A program made the translations under genes and the position numbers. Below are positions 30,104 to 60,459 of a DNA stretch of 64,000 bases, one piece after another (the first letter of the stretch is position 1; each line of letters opens with the position of its first letter). Source of the DNA: Macrostomum lignano. Lineage: Eukaryota. Location: contig NIVC01000218.1 in assembly GCA_002269645.1 (NCBI GenBank), positions 204,407 through 268,406 of the forward strand. Reading direction: 5' to 3'. The notes under the pieces are model-generated. The model saw nothing but the letters and a program-made list of their open reading frames with translations. It was not told the DNA's origin and did no database searches.

Positions 30104-30764
30104 ATTGTGCTTCGTCCTTCAACTGCCGACATCATGTTCGCCCGAATGCATATCACTTTTATATTGTTTTAAGCAGTCGTCTTCAGAACCAAGCATACAT
30201 CTACATGTACATCACTAGAACTATAACGCCTTTATGTACACGTCTATGTTTTGGCTTCGTCTGTCTGCCCATTTCCAGATATGATTATCTATCTGCTTCT
30301 AAAAAGACATTTAGACGCGATCGTACGCCCGAGAAGGGCTCATGACGTTGAAAGTTAAAAATTTAGTAGTGTAGCATAAAATCACTATATATTTTTTAGT
30401 TTTATTCGTCAGACCCTACTTACAGAAAGCAATGAGAATTTAATAAAATCGCAATCAATTATTTTATGCTTGGATTTGGAGCATAGCATTCAACTATTAG
30501 GTAGTATTCTATAATATTAATCAGAAGCATCAATACGACAGCTCCCTCAAACAGGATAAAAACCGACACCGTACAAACGCAAGCGGTCCCTTTTGAGTAC
30601 AAAATTCTTTTTCGCCTCAGTTTACACGTCTCAAAGCAATTTGAGACTTTAATGACTAACAATATATGCACGAATAACAGTGACACTCGTCAGACTGACA
30701 GATGGCATGCACCTCTCCAACAGGTGACCCTCATCTGTCTGGCTTGAGCTAAACATCCATCTGT

Positions 30765-31199
<435 letters not shown>

Positions 31200-32548: not shown

Positions 32549-47914
<15,366 letters not shown>

Positions 47915-48500: not shown

Positions 48501-49299
48501 GTTAGCTTCGGTAATAAGAGACTGAAGTTCTCAGACAGTTTGTAGCGAACAACGAAATAAAACATGAAAAAATGCGCAATCCTTTCAACTTTGGGTTCAT
48601 TCTTTTTATCCCATTTATCTTTATGAGAGACCAAAGGAAGGGATCTGGGTGGGATGTCTCGGCACTTCTTGCCAACTGTTTTGAAAAGTTATTGACTGCA
48701 GAAGTGACGTCTCGATGCCGTTGATTTATTTTAATTTTTGTGAATATTACCTTTCCCCTCGTACGAGCGTAACTTTTTACGAGCGTACGAGCGTAACAAA
48801 CCGGATTTTTTGTTTGATATTTTTATTTTATTATTTTCTGTTTAGTTTGCTCCATGCCTGCCGATGAGCCTGCTCCGCTGTACTATGCAGTCGTCACCTT
48901 TGCTTGCCGCAGTGACCCAAAGGTTTTAGGGCACAGAGATACGAATAGAAGAGCACATTATAGTTTGTACGGCTATCCTAGCAGCTAAAATGAGCATTAT
49001 TTTTTTCATTGAGTACGTTATCTACTGCAGCCAACTTCGGCAAATATTTTATTACGATAATACGTGCAATATCCTGTATATCTAAATAAATAAACTAAAT
49101 ATGTGTCATACACGGTGCACTTATCCTTAACTATAAAGTCGTCAAACGCACAGAAGTTAATTGCAGTTTCAGTTAGCGTTTCTAAAACAAATTCAACCGG
49201 CACCAAGGGCTTTAGCACCAGGGGCTTTAACACCAGAGGCGCCAGCACCAGGGGCGCCAGCACCAGGGGCGCCAGCACCATCCGGGGTGCCGGCGTCAG

Positions 49300-49640: not shown

Positions 49641-49952
49641 ACCCTGAACTGCGGAGTCACAGTAGAGAGAGAAACGGGGGTTAGAGAAGGCGATCGATAA
49701 TTTTATTGCACCCGCACACCACCGTCCTTGTTGAACTGTATTTTTTGTTTTGTATATTTACGTTTGAAAATTCTGAATAGCTCATATTTCACTACAGCTG
49801 TATAAAGTTGCTTGTATTAATAGCTGTTTGTTATGTAAAAAAGCAACAGTGTTTCATAAAGCTGAATAATTGTTCTATAATACCAACAACAGCAAAACAC
49901 ATGAGTCCAATAAACGTTCAGTGTAGTTTTGATTGCTCATTTTGCGTCACAT

Positions 49953-50717
49953 TCAGTGCTTGTGATCCGAGTGATGGTGCCCCTGGTGACCAGGCTCGTG
50001 CTGATGATGATGGCGGTGACCGCCCTCGCCGTGCTGATGATGATGATGCTGCTTCCCAGCCTCCGACTGACAGCAGTCGTTTTTCTGGCAGCAATCGCCG
50101 GAGTTGCAATCGCTAGGCGGGCATTTGCACTTTTCGCCGCACAATTCGGCCGAATGCTTCTGCTGAGTGTCGCCGCATGGCTTGCAGGATTTGTGGTCGG
50201 CTTTGCGTGTCGATCGGTGGCGCGGTGGATGGGGCGAAGGCTATGTAGATTCGTTCATTCGCTGCGATGTACATTTCTGTAGCCTTCTAACCCTGCCTAG
50301 CCTGCGTATATTTCTCCAACACTCTAACCCAGCCTAGCTTGCGTACATTTATCTAGCCCTCTAACCCTGCCTAGCCTGCGTACATTTCTCCAACCCTCTA
50401 ACCCAGCCTAGCCTGCGTACATTTCTCCAACCCTCTAACCCAGCCTAGCCTGCGTACATTTCTCCAACCCTCTAAGCCAGCCTAGCCTACGTGCATTTAT
50501 CTAACTCTGTTTAGACTACGTACAATTTTAAGTACAGTAATTCTAACGTATGTAAACTAGAGTGAACTTTCTAGTTTGTGTACATTCTGCTAGAGACTGC
50601 CTAATATCAGTACATTTATATCGACTCTTAACTAATACGTACACTGTTGACATCAAATACGGCTGAACAAATGCTATTCAAAATCGAAACAAGAGTGGAT
50701 AAATATTACTTACACAT
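49953..50717 (-). CDS. Small Cys/His-rich metallothionein-like protein (83 aa); exon 1 ATGT 50717-50714, exon 2 50200-49953
   Basis: Model MSDHKSCKPCGDTQQKHSAELCGEKCKCPPSDCNSGDCCQKNDCCQSEAGKQHHHHQHGEGGHRHHHQHEPGHQGHHHSDHKH; 10 Cys, 18 His, no aromatic residues; GTAAGT donor right after ATGT; phase-1 AAG acceptor; AATAAA at 49707-49702. The exon-2 frame is well supported; the start model is inferred. Confidence 0.7.
50282..50520. repeat. 37-bp minisatellite (CCCTCTAACCCAGCCTAGCCTGCGTACATTTCTCCAA)n
   Basis: About 6 copies in the predicted intron of the MT-like gene. Confidence 0.9.
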
Positions 50718-51258
50718 CCTCACGGAGACTTGTTGAAACAATAATAGATAGCCAGAAAATTTGAATTCGAGAGCTCGAGAATGCGATCTTATAGACGCAT
50801 GGCAGTCGTCTTCTGATATCCTCGATCGCTTTTATAGACTAGGGTCTTGAATTTTAATTGGTCAAAACACGCCATGGAAGATTTCCCAATTTTGGGTTTT
50901 AGAAAACAGTGCTCATTCGTCGCTCCCATATTCGTATAAGTCCAGTGAGCACTTGCTTCCCATCTATATGCTCCACCATGCATCTGGGAGGAATGGAGTT
51001 GAGCTGAAACAGAGGGCGCATTCGAAAAATTCAGCCAAAAACCAACCGAAGAGAAGTCCCGAGAGTGAGGGATCCCAGTTTTGTGAAGCGCATTTAGCAG
51101 CTAAATCATCCACATGCATAGCTCGCAGAGGCAGCCCGATATGGGCGATGCATGATATTGCGAATGCGCTGCTTTTTATCTCAACACACAGTTGGACAAC
51201 CACCACATTAAGTATGCATTCACTCCTGACCTTAGATTGTATGATGTCTATCTATCTA

Positions 51259-52227
51259 CTTCGGGTGTGTCATAAGTAATGTCACTGCAGGCCTCTGTCT
51301 AAAATATGTAGGCACATGGACTTGTGGGTAGTGTAGCTGCAAAGTATACTTAGTGAAGCAATAGCAGTGCATTTGAGACGTGCATAGGTTGTTTATGGCC
51401 CAAGCTATCGCAAGAATACGCCAAGCAGATTTAGCAAGTGCAACGCGATGAAAAATCATCTATGCAGTGAACAAAAATCACCATGAATCTCGACATGACG
51501 CCTGCACCAAGCAGATCCGCAAGGTGTTTAGCAGCCGGGGCTTGAATGACATCCTAAACTGCCTGGTTGCTGAGGATGAAAGCTGGCTCCACCTGGATGG
51601 CAAGGGCAGCAAGGCAGATAATCGCTGCTGGTTGGGAGCTGGGGACTTCAGGCCGATGGTGACTAGGAAGTCCATCTCGGACAAGAAGACCATGCTGCTG
51701 GTAGCCTTCACGCCAAACAAACGAGTCTCCATCTGCACAACTCCACCGAACATCAAGGTCGATGGCCAGTATTTTATCGACTTTTTCCGGCACACTGGGG
51801 ACCTCTGGTGCACTCTCCGGTCAAATCCATGTCACCTGGACGAGGTTCTGTGGCAGATGGACACCGCACGGCTGCACACCTGAAGGCTGTTTCGAATTTT
51901 CTGCCTGCACGGCGAGTGAATCTGCTCTGACAGTCCCTACAGCCCGGACTTCAACTTTTGCAAGAGATTCCTGTTCAAATGGCTGAAGGCTGACTTTTCC
52001 AAGAAGAGTTTCGCAAACCATGAAGAGGTAAAACAGGCTGCGTTGCACTGGTTATGGCAGTTGGAGGAAAAACACCTGCAGGCTGAGGTGGACAAGCTGT
52101 ATGAGCATTGCCAGAGGGTGATTGATATTGGGGGACTCTATGTTGTTGAGTGGTACAGTTTTGTTCATCTGCGATTGCAAGTTCGTCTGTTTTCACATCA
52201 GTGACATTACTTATGACACACCCGAAG
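51259..52227 (+). mobile_element. Internally deleted mariner-like DNA transposon (969 bp)
   Basis: Perfect 29-bp TIR CTTCGGGTGTGTCATAAGTAATGTCACTG; TA TSD on both sides; transposase remnants AEDESW, QMDTARLH, PYSPDF..., HCQRVIDIGGLYV; frameshifts; third catalytic Asp position reads Lys. Confidence 0.93.
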
Positions 52228-52365: not shown

Positions 52366-52779
52366 TAGTGTATGGAAATACATCGAAATGTATATAAAAA
52401 TCTAAAAAGTCTGCTCACACTGAACTCAGAAGAATTCGAAGTCACACTCTCCCACTCTACAATTCGATGCGATAGACGCCCCGGCCTCTCAAAAATCCCA
52501 AGTGGATCGAGTACGATTCGAAAACAGAAGCCGAAAGTTTATTAGGCAGGATAATTAAGCCGAAAGTTCTAGTCCCATTGTGCAGCCGTTCTGCTGGATC
52601 CAGAGGAAAAAATGGACGAAGTACAATTCGTACTACGTACATGTAAAAGTTTTCTCAATTTATATGCAAAACTGCATGACAACCTTACAAATGAAATTTT
52701 TTGACACATGCGTAAATAAAAAAATCTATTGGGAAATCAATCATGTTGGCCTTGTCATCAGACAGAAGTCTACGCTTGT

Positions 52780-53372
52780 ATGACTCAATGTGCCAAGCAG
52801 ACAGATAAACAACTCTAGCTCACGGATAGTCTATGACTCAATCTGCCAAGCAGACAGATAAACAACTCTAGCTCACGGATAGTCTATGACTCAATCTACC
52901 AAGCAAACAGATGAACAACTCTAGCTCACGGATAGTCTATGACTCAATCTGCCAAGCAAACAGATGAACAACTCTAGCTCACGGATAGTCTATGACTCAA
53001 TCTGCCAAGCAGACAGATAAACAACTCTAGCTCACGGATAGTCTATGACTCAATCTGCCAAGCAGACAGATAAACAACTCTAGCTCACGGATAGTCTATG
53101 ACTCAATCTGCCAAGCAGACAGATGAACAACTCTAGCTCACGGATAGTCTATGACTCAATCTGCCAAGCAGACAGATGAACAACTCTAGCTCACGGATAG
53201 TCTATGACTCAATCTGCCAAGCAGACAGATAAACAACTCTAGCTCACGGATAGTCTATGACTCAATCTGCCAAGCAGACAGATAAACAACTCTAGCTCAC
53301 GGATAGTTTATGACTCAATCTGCCAAGCAGACAGATGAACAACTCTAGCTCACGGATAGTCTATGACTCAAT
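52780..53372. repeat. 53-bp minisatellite (GACTCAATCTGCCAAGCAGACAGATAAACAACTCTAGCTCACGGATAGTCTAT)n
   Basis: About 11 contiguous copies. Confidence 0.95.
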
Positions 53373-54190
53373 TTAATAACTATGAAAACTTTTAAATAAA
53401 AAATGAAAGCAGAACTTCTGCACCATAGCCAGTTGCTTTTTACTACAAATAGCGTCAAGAGTGCTGTGTAGGGCTAAGCTCATAAATCTCAGCCAACTCA
53501 AATATAAATTTATTGCGTCAAAATTGGGCCTTAGCACAAGTGAAAAGTCAAAGCAGCGTATTAATAGATACAATAGGTATTAAGCAAATGTTTAAACTAT
53601 ACATGTGAACTAGGCAGCTAGGACATCAGACTACATGAAATACAACAAAATAAATAAATATATCGCATATTTATATACACAAATAACAAAACAATTTACA
53701 AATTTAATTTGAGCCATTTTAACTTTTTAGTATAGGGAACGCAGTTTCACTAGGAATTCCGTTTTAAAGAAGAGGACAAAAATGAGAAACGTTGAACTAC
53801 ATACACTACTACGAGTAATTCGATAAATATAGATTGATAATTTAAACACTATTGTTTCTCTTAGAGATTCGAGCCATTTAAACTTAGAATAAAAATCATA
53901 ATTTGTAGGCAAGAGAAATAAAAAACCAAGACTTAAAAATTAAAAAAAAATGTTGTGGAGCTAACTTTATATACGAGTATAAAAAGCTACTTAAAGTAGA
54001 GCAAAGAGATAGTTGTCTCCGTAAATTGGTATATTGCGTTAAAAATAAAACACTGATTTCTAAGCTAAAGACTAGCAAGTAAAATGACCTAGATCTAGCG
54101 TTATAAGATCGATGCTTGCTACTCAATAAAAAAGTAGTATGAAAAGAATGTTACTGTATCATCCAGAACGAGTAAAAATGAGACTTTTTA

Positions 54191-57100
54191 CTACTTAGGC
54201 CGCTGACTGTACTTGTGCCGTATGGTTGTCTCGAGTTCAGCCAGTTGCTGTTCGTCGAGGGCCTCATTGAAGTTGTCGATGCTAGCTAGGATCTCCGGGT
54301 TGCTTTGGAATTCGTAGTACCTGGTTTGTTGGTCACAGGTAGTTGGTTAAGTTCGCGAGTTCGTGCATAATATAAAGATATACAGATCCAAAAATGGCGG
54401 GTAACCTTGGAGCTAAATGGTTGAACACTGAACAGATTGATCTGCCATTCAGGCGGTCCCAAGTTCGAATCCCAGAAGAGGCGAAATACAATAATTATGG
54501 GGCAGATTGTTATTTATGAGAGTTATTTATAGCTACGGGACGAGATTTAGCCCAGTGGTGTAACGAGCGATTCTGTTAACCGGTAGGTCGCACGTTGGAA
54601 TCCCGGTACAGGCAAAACAATTTTCTAGATTATTTACTACGACATGACAAACATCTCTAATCTCTAATCATAATCTCTAATTTCGACGGTCACGGGTTCG
54701 AATCCTAACAGCAGCCAAAGTAATTTCTAGGCACATACTGTTAAAATCACTTACATAGAATTGGCCGAGTAGCGCTTGAATTTGATGCAAAAGTCCAAGC
54801 AGTTATAGGACATCCAGTACTTCCAATAGTTGATCACTGGCCCAACAGCCCGTGCCCGCTCCACCGGATAACTGGCCGGCAATTGTCGGATTTCGTCGTT
54901 GCCAATGACGCCCTCGTGAATTCTGGTCAGATATTTCAGCACCTCGCCAACGTGAGGCACCAGCGGCGGCTCCGTAGTGCTCATATTGCGAAAGTATTCC
55001 CGCGCAAATGCGGACTGGTTGGCCAGCTTGCTAGTGAAGTCCTTCAGCTTGCGGCGAACTGAGCGGCCTGCGGTTGAGTGGGGTGTACTTTTATTTATTG
55101 CAAATTGCTACTACTGACACATCACTCATGAATAGTATCTCACCAGGCCACGGCAGGCGATCCAGGCTAACCAGACACAGCACAATAGCCAGGTGAGAAT
55201 TGAAATTGTGATGCCGCCGCAGCTCCTCGGCCACTTTGCAGAAGAAGCTCATGAAGCGCTGCCGGTCGCGCATTCGATCGGCTGGCCGGCCCAGCACCAG
55301 CGTCTTCGCCCAGAAGCCGAGGCGATTGAAAAAGTTTATAAACGCCTGCAGATTAACAAACTGTTCCCCGGATCTGGCGCGCACGAAGGCCAGGTACTCC
55401 TGGGGGATCGGGGATTACAGAGGGGATTAACACTATATCGTGGGGATTAACACACTGTATCCTGAGGGATTAGCACACTGTATTCTGGGGATTAACACTG
55501 TATCCTGGGGATTAACTCACTGTATTCTGGGGATTAACACACTGGAATCTGGGGACTAACACACTGTATTCTGGGGATTAACACACTGTATTCTGGGGAT
55601 TAACTCACTGTATTCTGGGGATTAACTCACTGTATTCTGGGGATTAACACACTGTATCGTGAGGGATTAGCACACTGTATTCTGGGGATTAACACACTGT
55701 ATTCTGGGGATTAACACTGTATCCTGGGGATTAACACATTGTATGCAGGGAATTAACACACTGTATCGTGAGGGATTAGCTCACATTGTGAGGGATTAAG
55801 GTGTGAGGGATTAACACACTGTGATCTGGGGGATTACCGCACTGTATTGTAGGGATTAAAACTACATTTATGGGATTAAGGCACTATAAACCGTAGGTTT
55901 AACACACCTGGACTCTACTCTTGGGAGTAGAGCAATCTCACCTGAATATCGATTCTCCTATACAACCTGGCATCCATCAAGGTGATTTGCTCGGCCACCT
56001 GTCTGGGACTGAATTCCACTATGTTGCGTCGTTTTATCGACAAGGAGGTCGACAACGACAGAGTGGATTTTGCTTTTTCGCTCTCTTCTTCGTCTCGCTG
56101 CTGCTGCTGCTGAATGCGAAGGCAGTGCAGAGCGCTGCCAAGGATCTGCACTTCGGCCAGGTTACCGTCCGCTAGGAGACGCTCTTTGAGTTTAGCCAGC
56201 TGCTCCATCAATGGCGAGCAGGAGGCTGAGTCGGAGCCGGTGCTGGATGAGTTCAATCGATTCTCCCGGTCCTGCTGGGTCGACTCGTCCAACACGCGGA
56301 TTAGGAAAGCAAAAGCCGACTTCCACAGGGTGTCCTTGTTGGCCTGGGTCTGGGGTTTAATATTATTAGAGCGTTATAACTGGATTGCTAATCTAGTCAA
56401 TATTACACTGATTCAGGAATAGAATGGATTGCTAATCTAGCCAATACACACACTGATGCAGGAATATAATGGATTGCTAATCTAGCCAATATCACACTGA
56501 TTCAGGAATAGAATGGATTGCTAATCTAGCCAATATCACACTGATTCAGGAATAGAATGGATTGCTAATCTAGCCAATATCACACTGATTCAGGAATATA
56601 ATGGATTGCTAACCTAGCCAATACACACACTGATGCAGAAATAGAATGGATTGCTAATCTAGCCAATATCACACTGATTCAGGAATAGAATGGATTGCTA
56701 ATCTAGCCAATACACACTGATGCAGGAATATAATGGATTGCTAATCTAGCCAATATCACACTGATTCAGGAATAGAATGGATTGCTAATCTAGCCAATAT
56801 CACACTGATTCAGGAATAGAATGGATTGCTAATCTAGCCAATATCACACTGATTCAGGAATATAATGGATTACTAACCTAGCCAATATCACACTGATTCA
56901 GGAATATAATGGATTGCTAATCTAGCCGATATCACACTGATTCAGGAATAGAATGGATTGCTAATCTATCCAATATCACACTGATTCAGGAATAGAATGG
57001 ATTGCTAATCTAGCCAATATTACACTGATGCAGGAATATAATGGATTGCTAATCTAGCCAATACACACTGATGCAGAAATAGAATGGATTGCTAATCTAT

Positions 57101-57839
57101 CCAATATCACACTGATTCAGGAATAGAATGGATTGCTAATCTAGCCAATATTACACTGATGCAGGAATAGAATGGATTGCTAATCTATTGAAACTCACCT
57201 TAAAGTGCAGGCACCGTTCCACAATCTTGGCCAGCAGCTCGGCAGGCTTAGCAAAGCAGGGGAAAGTGGCGGCGAAACTCTCGCAGAACAGAATATGGGG
57301 CCGGTCGTTGCCAGGCAGACAGGCATAGACTAGCAACGCGTCCAATGGTCCGCCTCGAACTAGAATGCAATCGTCTCCAGACGTACTACTATTAGTAGCA
57401 TTAGCGGTACTGTTGGCATTGTCCCAGACTAGCAAATCGCTGAGATCTTCCTGGCAATGAGGCGGCAGCTGCGCAGCGGTGGCGGCAGCGACCGATTCAT
57501 TTGATGAAGCAGCCGGCTGCTGAGCGGCTTGTTGCTGAGGCTGCCTAACAGTCCTGCTGACTGTGGCGCTGCGCTGTACATACAGACCCGGCTGCAGTTC
57601 GCGCTGTTCAGACACTAGGCAGACGGTCTTGGTTCGCTCACCGTTAACCAACGGCGCGTCGGCTTCGGGATCGTCTGGCTCGGCTGCCGACAGCAGCTGA
57701 CGCCACCTGGCTCGGCACAGATCAAAGGATTCAATGGCCGAATGCCGGCTGAAGTCGATTGTCATCAGGTCGTCGCGATCAAAGCTGCCGCCGCTGCTTC
57801 TGCCGCTACTGTCGCCGAGTGCTTGCATGTACTGGGTAA
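54191..57839 (-). CDS. RAPGEF1: RasGEF (REM + CDC25 domains), RAPGEF1/C3G-like; exons 57839/57828-57199, 56343-55942, 55399-55144, 55067-54755, 54320-54191; may be 5'-incomplete
   Basis: Phase-consistent junctions (0,0,1,2); VRGGPLDALLVYA..FCESFAATF..F.KP.EL, KSAFAFLIRVLDE, QVAEQITLMDA, FFNRLGFW, HNFNSHLAI, RLPW, EPPLVPHVG, INYWK, NFNEALDE parallel the C3G REM/CDC25 sequence; TAG at 54193-54191. Confidence 0.8.
54401..54716 (+). pseudogene. Three tandem tRNA-derived / SINE-head remnants (54401-54483, 54540-54613, 54680-54716); middle one tRNA-Asn(GTT)-like
   Basis: B-boxes AGTTCGAATCC, CGTTGGAATCC, GGTTCGAATCC; A-boxes TGGAGCTAAATGG and TAGCCCAGTGG; CTGTTAACCG anticodon arm as in tRNA-Asn; no intact cloverleaf. 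Confidence 0.6.
55420..55880. repeat. About 22-bp minisatellite (GGGGATTAACACACTGTATTCT)n, intronic
   Basis: Direct inspection. Confidence 0.93.
56375..57188. repeat. 44-bp minisatellite (GGATTGCTAATCTAGCCAATATCACACTGATTCAGGAATAGAAT)n, intronic
   Basis: About 18 copies. Confidence 0.95.
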
Positions 57840-57904
57840 CTGCGGTGTGGGTTTACGGGAGGGGACTTGTGCTGTAGAACTCAACAATTGTTTGGTACCT
57901 AGTA

Positions 57905-59060
57905 GTTTCCTGTCCAGATTTCAAGTTTCGAGCTTCCTTGTTGAGCGAGCTTAGGTTTCTCCATCCAGATTTTAAGTTTAGAGCTTCATTGTTGAGCGAG
58001 CTTAGAAGGTTCCTCCATCCAGATTTTAAGTTTAGAGCTCCATGGTTGGGCGAGCTACAAGTTTCCTCCATCCAGATTTCATATTTAGAGATTCATTGTT
58101 AAGCGAGCTAGGTTCCTCTATCTATATTTCAAGTTTAGAGCTCCATGGTTGGGCGAGCTAGAAGGTTCCTCTATCCAGATTTCATGTTTAGAGATTCATG
58201 GTTAAGCGAGCTACAAGTTTCCTCTATCCAGATTTCATGTTTAGAGATTCATGGTTAAGCGAGCTACAAGTTTCCTCTATCCAGATTTCATGTTTAGAGA
58301 TTCATGGTTAAGCGAGCTACAAGTTTCCTCTATCCAGATTTCATGCTTAGAGATTCATGGTTAAGCGAGCTACAAGTTTCCTCTATCCAGATTTCATGTT
58401 TAGAGATTCATGGTTAAGCGAGCTACAAGTTTCCTCTATCCAGATTTTATGTTTAGAGATTCATGGTTAAGCGAGCTACAAGTTTCCTCTATCCAGATTT
58501 CATGTTTAGAGATTCATGGTTAAGCGAGCTACAAGTTTCCTCTATCCAGATTTCATGTTTAGAGATTCATGGTTAAGCGAGCTACAAGTTTCCTCTATCC
58601 AGATTTCATGTTTAGAGATTCATGGTTAAGCGAGCTACAAGTTTCCTCTATCCAGATTTCATGTTTAGAGATTCATGGTTAAGCGAGCTACAAGTTTCCT
58701 CTATCCAGATTTCATGTTTAGAGATTCATGGTTAAGCGAGCTACAAGTTTCCTCTATCCAGATTTCATGTTTAGAGATTCATGGTTAAGCGAGCTACAAG
58801 TTTCCTCTATCCAGATTTCATGTTTAGAGATTCATGGTTAAGCGAGCTACAAGTTTCCTCTATCCAGATTTCATGCTTAGAGATTCATGGTTAAGCGAGC
58901 TACAAGTTTCCTCTATCCAGATTTCATGTTTGAGATTCATGGTTAAGCGAGCTACAAGTTTCCTCTATCCAGATTTCATGTTTAGAGATTCATGGTTAAG
59001 CGAGCTACAAGTTTCCTCTATCCAGATTTCATGTTTAGAGATCCATGGTTGAGCGAGGAA
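57905..59060. repeat. 53-bp minisatellite (TCCAGATTTCATGTTTAGAGATTCATGGTTAAGCGAGCTACAAGTTTCCTCTA)n
   Basis: About 21 copies, homogeneous in the centre and diverged at the edges. Confidence 0.96.
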
Positions 59061-60459
59061 GAAGTTTCCGAGCTTTACGAGTAACAATTTAAAACTCTAG
59101 AATGCCTTCAATCCGCTTCAATGGTTTATTCAGGCTGTTCAAGCATGAATCCCTGTAGGCAGTTACTAGCTAAGCAAATTTATAGCTAAAACCAGTTTGC
59201 GCAAGTTCCAGCAGCTTCCAGCATGCTAATGCCAGTACAGTACACTGTGCTTATACGGAATTGAAATTGCAATGTTTAATTATAATAGCAATAAATTATC
59301 CCGATAGCTACTAAAGTGCAAATAGTCACAAGCACTAAAATTCTGGATACGATAAAAACGCGACATTGCGACTTTACACATAGATTGGGAGATGTTAGGC
59401 CTAGTATTGAGTCAACGAACGACCAACCAAACCCAGTTAGAAATTAGGTAGGCACAAGGATACACCATAGTCACAGGACTTACAGAAGGTAGAGATGGCG
59501 AAGGGGTAAAAAGGGAAAATGGAGAGTAGATAGGGAAATGAGAGGGAGAGAAGGGGAGAGACTACTACTAAGGGGATTAACAATTCGAAAAACGAGTTTT
59601 TATAATGCTTTTAATGGGGCGATCATTGATTTCTATGAAGATTGCATCATAACTGCAGCATATGAGCAGAAAGGAGATGTGCAAATAAACAATCAGGGCA
59701 ACCCACTACACACAATCAAGAGAAGCAAATTGGCTTTAGCAGTAACCAGATGATAACACAGTTAACAGGGCTTAGCAGATAGGAAAGAGACACAGACTTA
59801 TACAAGACTAAACCCAATTAGTGTACCTGCAGTGCCCAAAGTCGCACGGGCGGACTATATAGGAAAAGCTATCGGATAGTTCGTAAAATGAAGTTAACTG
59901 TCTGTGTCCAACGACAAGAACACTCTTCGTATAACACAGGCTCAAAATGATTTTATACACATAGGAGAACCCTGCGCAGTTCAGACACGCGATAATACGA
60001 GCAGAAAAGCTTTAGAGTGCGTGCCTTTGCATGTCTATTGCATGTTCGCTTATTAGATGGACTCAGCGACTTCCTGTCACCCCGGTAAGGAAAAACTGCG
60101 ACAAGCGACATCCGGCGTCCACAAAAATGACGACAATTTTCTTTTATCAAAAAAGACCCAAATTTGAACTTTTTTAGTAGATTCTTTTGCGGCTCTTTCA
60201 GACGTTTCAGTTCGAGTCTGGAGACTCAATTGATTTGAAGAGATTATTGAAAAAAGATAATAAAGCTTAATTAGCAGTGCACGCAGGACAACTCGAGCAC
60301 TTTCGGCGCTTTTCTGATCCAGAATTTTGGTACTTTTAAGCTCATTTTTTGCACTGGTGTTCTTAAATGCCTGCCTTTGCCGCTCATTGACTTTTTAGCA
60401 ATCAAATATTCCGTTTTAAAATATTTCATACGAATGGTTGTTTTGGATTTCGGAATTCT

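What the first reader, a model, noticed from the sequence alone, without database searches (positions are those of the whole stretch)
49953..50717. Bipartite Cys-cluster / His-tail metallothionein-like microprotein
The minus strand encodes a CxxC..CxxxCxC..C..CC..CC cluster followed by a His-rich tail (10 Cys and 18 His in 83 aa, no aromatic residues), with the GC-rich codon usage of real exons in this window. A perfect GTAAGT donor immediately after ATGT (50717-50714) splices in phase 1 to AAG|CC at 50200 to give MSDHKSCKPC...; a very short first exon and phase-1 intron are typical of MT genes (established). AATAAA follows. Classical animal MTs are nearly His-free, so a two-part soft-metal (Cys) / Zn-Ni-Cu (His) binder may be an undescribed MT type. 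An alternative start is a spliced-leader AUG joined in frame at the acceptor 50240.
Basis: partly seen in the sequence, partly recalled or inferred. Interest (0 to 1): 0.8.

Follow-up and report, generated by a model that had tools for sequence, protein, structure and literature searches.

The report
Flatworm Cys-cluster/His-tail metallothionein-like gene
This is a real, already-annotated but uncharacterised two-exon gene of the flatworm Macrostomum lignano. Its 83-residue product joins a metallothionein-like 10-cysteine half to a 50%-histidine tail, has no detectable relatives elsewhere, and is a plausible but untested first metallothionein candidate for flatworms.

Summary
Minus-strand exon 1 (…ATGT, donor GTAAGT) joins exon 2 at 50200. 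The product is MSDHKSCKPC…HSDHKH: 83 aa, 10 Cys in residues 7-45, 16 of 18 His in the last 32, and no Phe/Tyr/Trp.

The window is Macrostomum lignano. GenBank's RNA-seq-based annotation carries exactly this splice: PAA84756.1 has a CDS identical to the window's, and PAA64456.1 is a 95%-identical homeologue. Both are named "hypothetical protein".

The homeologue keeps the structure and all 10 Cys. The Cys core shows 0 changes in 127 nt, against 14% divergence in the intron. The spliced-leader start proposed at 50240 is not conserved: the homeologue has a stop and a frameshift there.

No relative was found among 1.84 billion representative proteins, in Pfam (no metallothionein family even at E≤10) or in PDB sequences. 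No conserved MRE, HSE or ARE lies upstream. AlphaFold gives no confident fold. No paper or supplement searched mentions the gene.

Best reading (about 0.55): a cytosolic, metal-folded, metallothionein-like buffer with a thiolate-cluster domain and a slippage-generated poly-His domain. It is metallothionein-like by composition only; metal binding and regulation are untested. I class it as a new variant of a known kind, of moderate interest.

The parts
50857..50861 (-). CCAAT motif, 144 nt upstream of the ATG
   Evidence: Motif scan; identical in homeologue L001. A candidate only, because short motifs occur by chance.
50829..50836 (-). TATAAAAG, candidate TATA box, 119 nt upstream of the ATG
   Evidence: conserved in L001 and L002. 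It lies only 18-20 nt upstream of the 5' end of the annotated transcript model, which is shorter than the canonical 25-30 nt. Its function is inferred.
50718..50816 (-). 5' UTR part of exon 1. The 5' end is approximate (50816-50818), taken from the start of the partial GenBank CDS PAA84756.1.
   Evidence: P0002 begins SEDDCHASIRSH..., which is the in-frame translation from 50816. It is 93.9% identical to the homeologue. No AG dinucleotide precedes it, so it is not a trans-splice acceptor.
50789..50800 (-). Three-codon upstream ORF in the 5' UTR (ATG CGT CTA TAA)
   Evidence: retained in L001 as ATG CAT CTA TAA. Its role is unknown.
50714..50717 (-). Coding end of exon 1: ATG plus the first base of codon 2 (phase-1 junction); A at position -3
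   Evidence: identical in all three copies.
50201..50713 (-). Intron of 513 nt, with donor GTAAGT at 50713-50708 and acceptor AG at 50202-50201
   Evidence: It is 86% identical to the homeologue, with 95 gap columns. Its last 40 nt carry a 19-bp insertion with a stop and a 2-bp indel in L001.
50269..50505 (-). 37-bp tandem repeat inside the intron, 6.4 copies
   Evidence: TRF. The GenBank copy L002 has one more unit, and L001 has a different number.
50052..50200 (-). Exon 2, Cys-cluster domain (residues 2-51): C-x2-C-x11-C-x3-C-x-C-x4-C-x4-CC-x4-CC, plus His4 and His17
   Evidence: All 10 Cys are conserved, and 50182-50056 is a 127-nt run of perfect identity with the homeologue.
49956..50051 (-). 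Exon 2, His tail (residues 52-83): 16 His in 32 residues, built from (CAT)n runs and an imperfect 33-bp duplication
   Evidence: TRF gives period 33 and 1.9 copies at 49985-50045. The homeologue differs by R64G and one deleted His codon.
49953..49955 (-). Stop codon TGA
49690..49952 (-). 3' UTR, with AATAAA at 49707-49702
   Evidence: It is 253/253 identical to the homeologue and forms part of a 432-bp perfect-identity run at 50009-49578. There is no Rfam match and no unusual fold.

Best explanation
The locus is an independent, expressed, two-exon gene of Macrostomum lignano (GenBank BOX15_Mlig034277 g2-type copy). It encodes a 9.3-kDa, very hydrophilic cytosolic protein with no signal peptide and no hydrophobic core. 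Such a protein can only acquire structure by binding metal.

Proposed mechanism, all inferred:
- The N-terminal half has 10 Cys plus His4 and His17. It would wrap about 3-4 divalent ions (Zn, Cd) or about 6 Cu(I) in a thiolate cluster, as metallothionein domains do.
- The C-terminal half has 16 His in 32 residues. It would add several imidazole sites for borderline ions (Zn, Ni, Co, Cu(II)). These sites would release metal on mild acidification, because His has a pKa near 6.
- Together the two halves would make a two-chemistry metal buffer or sequestration protein.
- The tail was generated, and is still being remodelled, by triplet slippage and duplication.

Shown here: the gene structure, its transcript-based annotation, the composition, conservation of the Cys core between homeologues, and the lack of relatives.
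Inferred only: metal binding, stoichiometry, physiological role and regulation.
For: Gene model. The spliced CDS equals the RNA-seq-based GenBank models PAA84756.1 (CDS identical) and PAA64456.1 (95% identical). That annotation was built with StringTie/TACO/TBONE/TransDecoder from RNA-seq (PMC5730564).

Composition. The protein has 10 Cys and 18 His in 83 aa. GRAVY is -1.79 and there are no aromatic residues. It contains CxxC, CxC and two CC motifs. The Cys domain is 19.6% Cys and the tail is 50% His. There is no hydrophobic N-terminus.

Fold. AlphaFold finds no autonomous fold: mean pLDDT 58.8, pTM 0.29. This fits a metal-dependent fold.

Conservation. All 10 Cys are kept. The Cys core has 0 differences in 127 nt, against about 5% in the flanks and 14% in the intron. 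The only indel in the CDS is one whole codon.

Precedents from the literature. His-containing C-terminal extensions tune the Zn/Cd selectivity of C. elegans MTL-1 (PMC11134313). His-rich Hpn with CC pairs stores Ni (PMC5312948). M. lignano tolerates Cd up to about 330 uM (PMC11641670).
Against: - There is no sequence relationship to any described MT family.
- No conserved MRE, HSE or ARE lies within about 540 bp upstream. The single TGCRCNC match at 51014-51020 is lost in the homeologue, and the motif is not enriched in the window (31 found, 46 expected).
- Substitutions between homeologues are 3 non-synonymous to 1 synonymous. The non-coding 3' UTR is even better conserved than the CDS. The low divergence could therefore reflect gene conversion rather than selection on the protein.
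- Overall Cys content is 12%, below classical MTs.
- No expression, induction or localisation data could be retrieved.
- The gene is known from one species only.
Confidence: 0.55

Rival explanations
1. It is a young, lineage-restricted orphan gene. The odd composition is a by-product of repeat expansion, and the gene has no selected metal-handling role: it is transcribed and perhaps translated, but functionally neutral or doing something unrelated.
For: No homologue was found anywhere outside M. lignano. The tail is made of (CAT)n runs and a 33-bp duplication, and it differs by slippage between copies. Non-synonymous changes outnumber synonymous ones 3 to 1. The UTR is as conserved as the CDS, which fits gene conversion. 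The surrounding genome is saturated with tandem repeats.
Against: The Cys-rich half is not a simple repeat, and TRF finds nothing there. Ten Cys in MT-type motifs with no aromatic or hydrophobic residues is a very specific composition. The frame, the splice sites, the ATG context and all Cys are intact in every copy. The Cys core is a 127-nt perfect block flanked by substitutions.
Confidence: 0.2
2. It is a tissue-specific structural or packaging protein, for example of the intracellularly formed stylet, of sperm, or of gland granules. Cys cross-links and His-metal coordination would harden or condense a material, as in His-rich jaw, beak and byssus proteins.
For: His-rich and Cys-rich small proteins are used in this way in other invertebrates (general knowledge, not tested here). 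Many M. lignano orphan genes are linked to reproduction (titles and abstracts of PMC7336406 and PMC5977470).
Against: The protein has no signal peptide. It lacks the Gly, Tyr or DOPA-type composition of such proteins. It is very small. Searches of supplements from reproduction, germline and ageing studies found no mention of the gene, although the stored files may be truncated.
Confidence: 0.12
3. The Cys/His ORF is not an independent gene. It would be the terminal exon of a longer protein (for example the RasGEF gene about 3.4 kb upstream on the same strand), or it would start from a spliced-leader AUG joined at acceptor 50240.
For: A 955-aa RasGEF gene lies upstream on the same strand. The genomic frame stays open for 14 codons upstream of the 50200 acceptor. 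About 39% of M. lignano genes are trans-spliced (PMC5730564).
Against: Both GenBank models keep the gene separate and start at the exon-1 ATG. The stretch 50240-50201 carries an in-frame TAG and a 2-bp indel in the homeologue. The exon-1 ATG, its donor and the TATA/CCAAT pair are conserved. Trans-spliced genes are enriched for conserved genes and non-conserved ones are mostly not trans-spliced (PMC8629364).
Confidence: 0.04

Closest known systems
Caenorhabditis elegans metallothionein MTL-1 (His-containing C-terminal insertion)
   Same: It is a small cytosolic Cys-rich protein whose C-terminal extension supplies His ligands. That extension forms a Zn-specific His3Cys site and shifts Zn/Cd selectivity (PMC11134313). 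The general logic is the same: a thiolate cluster followed by a C-terminal His part.
   Different: No detectable sequence similarity was found. [quoted passage not shown] Here there is a separate 32-residue tail with 16 His and no Cys. MTL-1 has 19 Cys, against 10 here.
Helicobacter pylori Hpn (His-rich Ni-storage protein)
   Same: It is a very small, hydrophilic, cytosolic protein with poly-His runs and two CC pairs. Hpn has 60 aa, 28 His (46.7%) and two EEGCC motifs, and binds several Ni2+ ions reversibly (PMC5312948). The tail here is 50% His and the protein also has two CC pairs.
   Different: Hpn is bacterial, with no homology to this protein. It is His-dominated throughout with only 4 Cys. 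Here the Cys and His parts are spatially separated and the Cys part resembles a metallothionein.
Classical animal metallothioneins (vertebrate, echinoderm, mollusc and arthropod families; Pfam MT families)
   Same: Shared features are low mass, no aromatic residues, Cys in CxC, CC and CxxC motifs, an apo-form predicted to be unstructured, and a small intron-containing gene.
   Different: Pfam returns no MT family even at E<=10. Overall Cys is 12%, against about 20-30%. His is 22%, against about 0-3%. No MRE cluster is present in the promoter.
ATCUN (NH2-X-X-His) peptides such as histatin-5 or the albumin N-terminus
   Same: After removal of the initiator Met, the N-terminus would be S-D-H (S-E-H in the homeologue), with His in position 3. 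A His-rich sequence is present as in histatin. This is read from the sequence and from general knowledge of the motif.
   Different: Those peptides are secreted. Here an N-terminal Ser may be acetylated, which would abolish the site. This was not tested.

Membership tests
Metallothionein superfamily (operational definition) | Low molecular mass (below about 10 kDa) | tested here: met
   83 aa, 9.29 kDa.
Metallothionein superfamily (operational definition) | High Cys content (about 15-30%) arranged as CxC, CC or CxxC motifs | tested here: inconclusive
   The Cys domain (residues 1-51) is 19.6% Cys, with one CxxC, one CxC and two CC motifs. The whole protein is only 12% Cys because of the tail.
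Metallothionein superfamily (operational definition) | Absence or scarcity of aromatic residues | tested here: met
   No Phe, Tyr or Trp. His, however, is 21.7%, which is atypical.
Metallothionein superfamily (operational definition) | High metal content bound in metal-thiolate clusters | not testable with these tools
   This needs recombinant protein with ESI-MS, ICP, and CD or UV spectroscopy.
Metallothionein superfamily (operational definition) | Metal-inducible expression, or metal-response elements in the promoter (typical but not universal) | tested here: not met
   One TGCRCNC match lies 303 nt upstream of the ATG and is lost in the homeologue. The motif is not enriched in the window (31 found, 46 expected). 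No HSE or ARE was found. Expression data were not retrievable.
Any described metallothionein sequence family (Pfam MT families, and MTs in NCBI/UniProt including nematode MTL-1/2) | Detectable sequence similarity to family members or profiles | tested here: not met
   Pfam hmmscan gave 0 families at E<=10. phmmer of the Cys domain against 1.84 billion representatives found only the paralogue and one spurious repetitive protein. The best PDB sequence match had E=1.3 and was not an MT.
Hpn / Hpn-like His-rich nickel-binding proteins | About 45% or more His, with poly-His runs and Cys pairs, and homology to Helicobacter Hpn | tested here: not met
   The tail is 50% His, with HHHH and two HHH runs, and two CC pairs lie in the other half. 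There is no sequence homology, and overall His is 21.7%. The resemblance is in composition only.
Spliced-leader trans-spliced mRNA with an SL-donated AUG | A conserved in-frame coding stretch downstream of the proposed acceptor at 50240 | tested here: not met
   The homeologue has CCT TCC TAG directly after the equivalent acceptor, and a 2-bp indel further on. SL-containing reads could not be examined.

The most novel reading that the evidence does not exclude
This would be the first metallothionein of Platyhelminthes and the founder of a new, Macrostomum-restricted MT family. In it a 10-Cys thiolate-cluster domain is fused to an autonomously metal-binding poly-His domain generated by triplet slippage. 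The result would be one small protein with two ligand chemistries: soft metals (Cd, Cu(I)) on sulfur, and borderline metals (Zn, Ni, Co, Cu(II)) on imidazole, with pH-switchable release.
Probability: 0.3. Interest if true: 0.65.

Novelty: new variant of a known kind. Interest (0 to 1): 0.45.

Why it matters
Parasitic flatworms are reported to have no recognisable metallothionein genes, and phytochelatin synthase is proposed as their main metal defence (PMC3561135). No paper found here describes a metallothionein of Macrostomum.

A metallothionein-like gene in M. lignano would fill that gap. This early-branching, free-living flatworm tolerates high cadmium (PMC11641670), and stable transgenesis is established in it (PMC5730564), so the question of how flatworms buffer metals becomes testable in vivo.

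The clean separation of a Cys cluster from a 50%-His tail would also be a natural experiment. It could show how His ligands tune metal selectivity, extending what is known from the single His3Cys site of C. elegans MTL-1 (PMC11134313).

If the protein proves irrelevant to metals, the locus remains a tidy example of a lineage-restricted microprotein gene shaped by repeat slippage in a neopolyploid genome.

Tried and rejected
- Pfam scan of the product at E<=10: no family.
- PDB sequence search at E<=10: only an irrelevant Brugia protein, E=1.3.
- phmmer of the Cys domain against 1.84 billion representatives: the only non-paralogue hit, P0003, is a 1067-aa repetitive junk translation that matches through multiple short stretches. 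I rejected it as spurious.
- AlphaFold2 on the homeologue protein: mean pLDDT 58.8, so no fold search was run, because it would be meaningless.
- Promoter motif scans (MRE, HSE, ARE, AP-1, CRE): nothing conserved. GATA-type matches are conserved but at chance frequency.
- Searches for the gene ID in full texts and in supplements of seven M. lignano studies: no text hit and none in the supplements of five of them. One paper had no stored supplement. The stored files may be truncated, so absence there says little.
- Rfam search and RNA folding of the perfectly conserved 3' UTR: no family, z=+0.96.
- My guess that the ORF at 51467-51883 is a mariner transposase fragment: not confirmed by Pfam.
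- The idea that the window is the GenBank contig itself: rejected. The window differs from NIVC01000363.1 by one 37-bp intron repeat unit, one 3' UTR base and about 1-6% in the flanks.

Full report
WHAT IS THERE. On the minus strand the frame ending at TGA 49955-49953 is open back to an in-frame TAG at 50243-50241 and contains no ATG. Joining ATGT (50717-50714, followed by a perfect GTAAGT donor) to the acceptor ...CGCAAAG|CC at 50200 gives a 252-nt CDS. The product is MSDHKSCKPCGDTQQKHSAELCGEKCKCPPSDCNSGDCCQKNDCCQSEAGKQHHHHQHGEGGHRHHHQHEPGHQGHHHSDHKH.

There are 10 Cys, all within residues 7-45, and 18 His, 16 of them in the last 32 residues. There is no Phe, Tyr or Trp, and also no Ile or Val. 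Mass is 9.3 kDa, GRAVY is -1.79 and pI is 6.8. Among 227 open frames of at least 80 codons in the window this one ranks first for Cys+His. The other Cys-rich frames are translations of (TCTG)n and (TGTC)n microsatellites. AATAAA lies at 49707-49702, 246 nt after the stop.

WHOSE GENE IT IS. A search of 5.8 billion proteins returned a single cluster. Its members are PAA64456.1 (P0001, 82 aa, MSEHKSCQPC..., 95% identical) and PAA84756.1 (P0002, a 116-aa 5'-partial CDS). [quoted passage not shown] P0002 is the window's own product preceded by the in-frame translation of the 5' UTR from 50816.

That annotation was built from RNA-seq with StringTie/TACO, boundary evidence (TBONE) and TransDecoder (PMC5730564). 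The junction and the expression are thus supported indirectly by transcript data.

The window is not the GenBank contig itself. Against NIVC01000363.1 (L002) the gene region is identical except for one 37-bp intron repeat unit and one 3' UTR base, and the flanks are 94-99% identical. It is therefore another assembly, allele or copy of the g2-type locus. The g1 homeologue lies on NIVC01001749.1 (L001). In both GenBank contigs a 955-aa RasGEF gene lies a few kb upstream on the same strand (about 3.3 kb in L002, about 2.6 kb in L001) and is annotated separately.

ANATOMY.
- Upstream of the ATG lie a CCAAT (50861-50857) and TATAAAAG (50836-50829). Both are conserved in the homeologue.
- The TATA-like element is only 18-20 nt from the 5' end of the g2 transcript model, so its role is inferred, not shown.
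- The 5' UTR holds a conserved three-codon uORF (50800-50789).
- The ATG has A at position -3.
- The 513-nt intron carries a 37-bp tandem repeat (50269-50505) whose copy number differs among all three copies.
- The His tail is encoded by (CAT)n runs and an imperfect 33-bp duplication.

COMPARISON OF THE HOMEOLOGUES. Identity between the window and L001, by segment:
- upstream: 94.8%
- 5' UTR: 93.9%
- intron: 86%, with many indels
- exon 2 CDS: 98.4%
- 3' UTR: 100% (253/253)
- downstream: 95.7%

The CDS differences are D3E, K8Q, one synonymous change (Gly50), R64G and the loss of one His codon. All 10 Cys are kept. The longest perfect-identity runs in the 2-kb alignment are 432 bp (50009-49578: the end of the tail, the 3' UTR and beyond) and 127 bp (50182-50056: the whole Cys core).

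This fits constraint on the mature mRNA and on the Cys core. However, the UTR is at least as conserved as the CDS, and the substitution ratio is 3 non-synonymous to 1 synonymous. Gene conversion between homeologues explains the pattern equally well, so I do not claim purifying selection on the protein.

The 40 nt upstream of the 50200 acceptor behave as intron. In the homeologue they contain a 19-bp insertion that places TAG in frame right after the equivalent of the 50240 acceptor, and also a 2-bp indel. This argues against the alternative start from a spliced-leader AUG at 50240. Trans-spliced genes in this species are also enriched for conserved genes (PMC8629364).

RELATIVES. None were found.
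- Pfam gives no family even at E<=10, so no metallothionein model matches.
- phmmer of the 50-residue Cys domain against 1.84 billion cluster representatives finds only the paralogue (E=1e-23). The other hit is a spurious multi-stretch match to a repetitive 1067-aa translation.
- PDB sequences give nothing.
- AlphaFold2 gives no confident fold: mean pLDDT 58.8, pTM 0.29.

The gene is, as far as these databases reach, restricted to M. lignano. Transcriptomes of other Macrostomum species are evidently not represented in these collections, so its real taxonomic range is unknown.

HOW IT MOST LIKELY WORKS (inference). The protein has no signal peptide, no hydrophobic core, and strong metal ligands at 34% of its residues. 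If it is made, it will almost certainly bind metal in a reducing cytosol.

The N-terminal half has the size, Cys density (19.6%), motif types (CxxC, CxC, two CC) and lack of aromatics of a single metallothionein domain. By analogy with M(II)3Cys9 and M(II)4Cys11 clusters it could hold about 3-4 Zn or Cd, or about 6 Cu(I). His4 and His17 are possible extra ligands.

The tail (50% His, with HHHH and HHH runs separated by Gly, Glu, Gln and Pro) resembles Hpn in composition. Hpn binds several Ni2+ reversibly (PMC5312948). The tail would add imidazole sites for Zn, Ni, Co or Cu(II) that open near pH 6.

C. elegans MTL-1 shows that a few C-terminal His can form a Zn-specific site and bias an MT towards Zn over Cd (PMC11134313). 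The present protein would be an extreme, modular version of that idea.

After Met removal the N-terminus (S-D-H, or S-E-H in g1) would fit the ATCUN pattern X-X-His, unless it is acetylated.

WHAT SPEAKS AGAINST A METALLOTHIONEIN ROLE.
- There is no family membership.
- No conserved MRE, HSE or ARE was found. The one TGCRCNC core at 51014-51020 is lost in the homeologue, and the motif is not enriched in the window.
- Overall Cys is only 12%.
- No expression, induction or localisation data exist. The gene ID occurs in none of the searchable full texts or in the stored supplements of five M. lignano studies; a sixth study had no stored supplement.

RIVALS.
- A young orphan gene whose composition is a by-product of repeats, with no metal role (about 0.2).
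- A tissue-specific structural or packaging protein that uses Cys cross-links and His-metal bridges (about 0.12).
- Part of a longer transcript, or started by a spliced leader (about 0.04).

CONTEXT AND NOVELTY. Parasitic flatworms are reported to lack recognisable MT genes (PMC3561135). No paper on a Macrostomum MT was found. M. lignano tolerates cadmium up to about 330 uM but copper only to about 10 uM (PMC11641670).

The gene is already in GenBank as a hypothetical protein, so the sequence is not new. Its reading as a bipartite Cys-cluster/His-tail metal-binding protein appears to be undescribed. I class it as a new variant of a known kind: metallothionein-like in how it probably works, but not a member of any described MT family. 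Interest is moderate (0.45). It is a clear, cheaply testable candidate in a tractable animal, but every functional statement is still inference from composition.

Noticed in passing
window 50009-49578 (minus strand), compared with L001 10769-11200: A 432-bp run of perfect identity between the two homeologous loci. It covers the end of the His tail, the whole 3' UTR and about 120 bp past the AATAAA, while the flanks are about 5% diverged and the intron 14%. There is no Rfam match and no unusual RNA fold. Gene conversion or sequence-level constraint are both possible; the cause is unexplained.
   Followed up: partly
window 50800-50789 (minus strand): A three-codon upstream ORF (ATG CGT CTA TAA) in the 5' UTR. 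It is retained in the homeologue as ATG CAT CTA TAA.
   Followed up: no
window 50269-50505: A 37-bp tandem repeat inside the intron. Its copy number differs among the window (6.4), GenBank contig NIVC01000363.1 (one more unit) and the homeologue.
   Followed up: partly
window 51259-52227: About 970 bp that are present here and in L002 but absent from the homeologue L001. The stretch contains a 138-aa ORF (51467-51883, plus strand) whose C-terminus looked transposase-like to me, but Pfam gave no match.
   Followed up: partly
window about 54190-60300 and beyond (minus strand): A RasGEF-domain gene (955-aa product, PF00617) on the same strand upstream of the finding. It is interrupted and flanked by large tandem arrays: period 53 at 52779-53372 and 57913-59069, period 44 at 56381-57187, and period 22 at 55422-55778.
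   Followed up: no
window 33857-36920; 30760-31198; 43392-43699; 46331-47468: A 3-kb purine-rich 15-bp satellite (GAGACTCGGGGAGGG, about 200 copies), long (TCTG)n and (TGTC)n microsatellites, and a CT-rich 15-bp array. The microsatellites create spurious Cys-rich open frames that could mislead a composition scan.
   Followed up: partly
window 49200-49280, compared with L001 11479-12027: A 15-bp GC-rich repeat (AGCACCAGGGGCGCC) downstream of the gene. It has about 4.5 copies here but is expanded to several hundred bp in the homeologous locus.
   Followed up: no
window 50198-50190 (minus strand; codons 3-5): After removal of the initiator Met, the N-terminus would be Ser-Asp-His (Ser-Glu-His in the homeologue). 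This is an ATCUN-type X-X-His Cu(II)/Ni(II) motif, provided the Ser is not acetylated.
   Followed up: no
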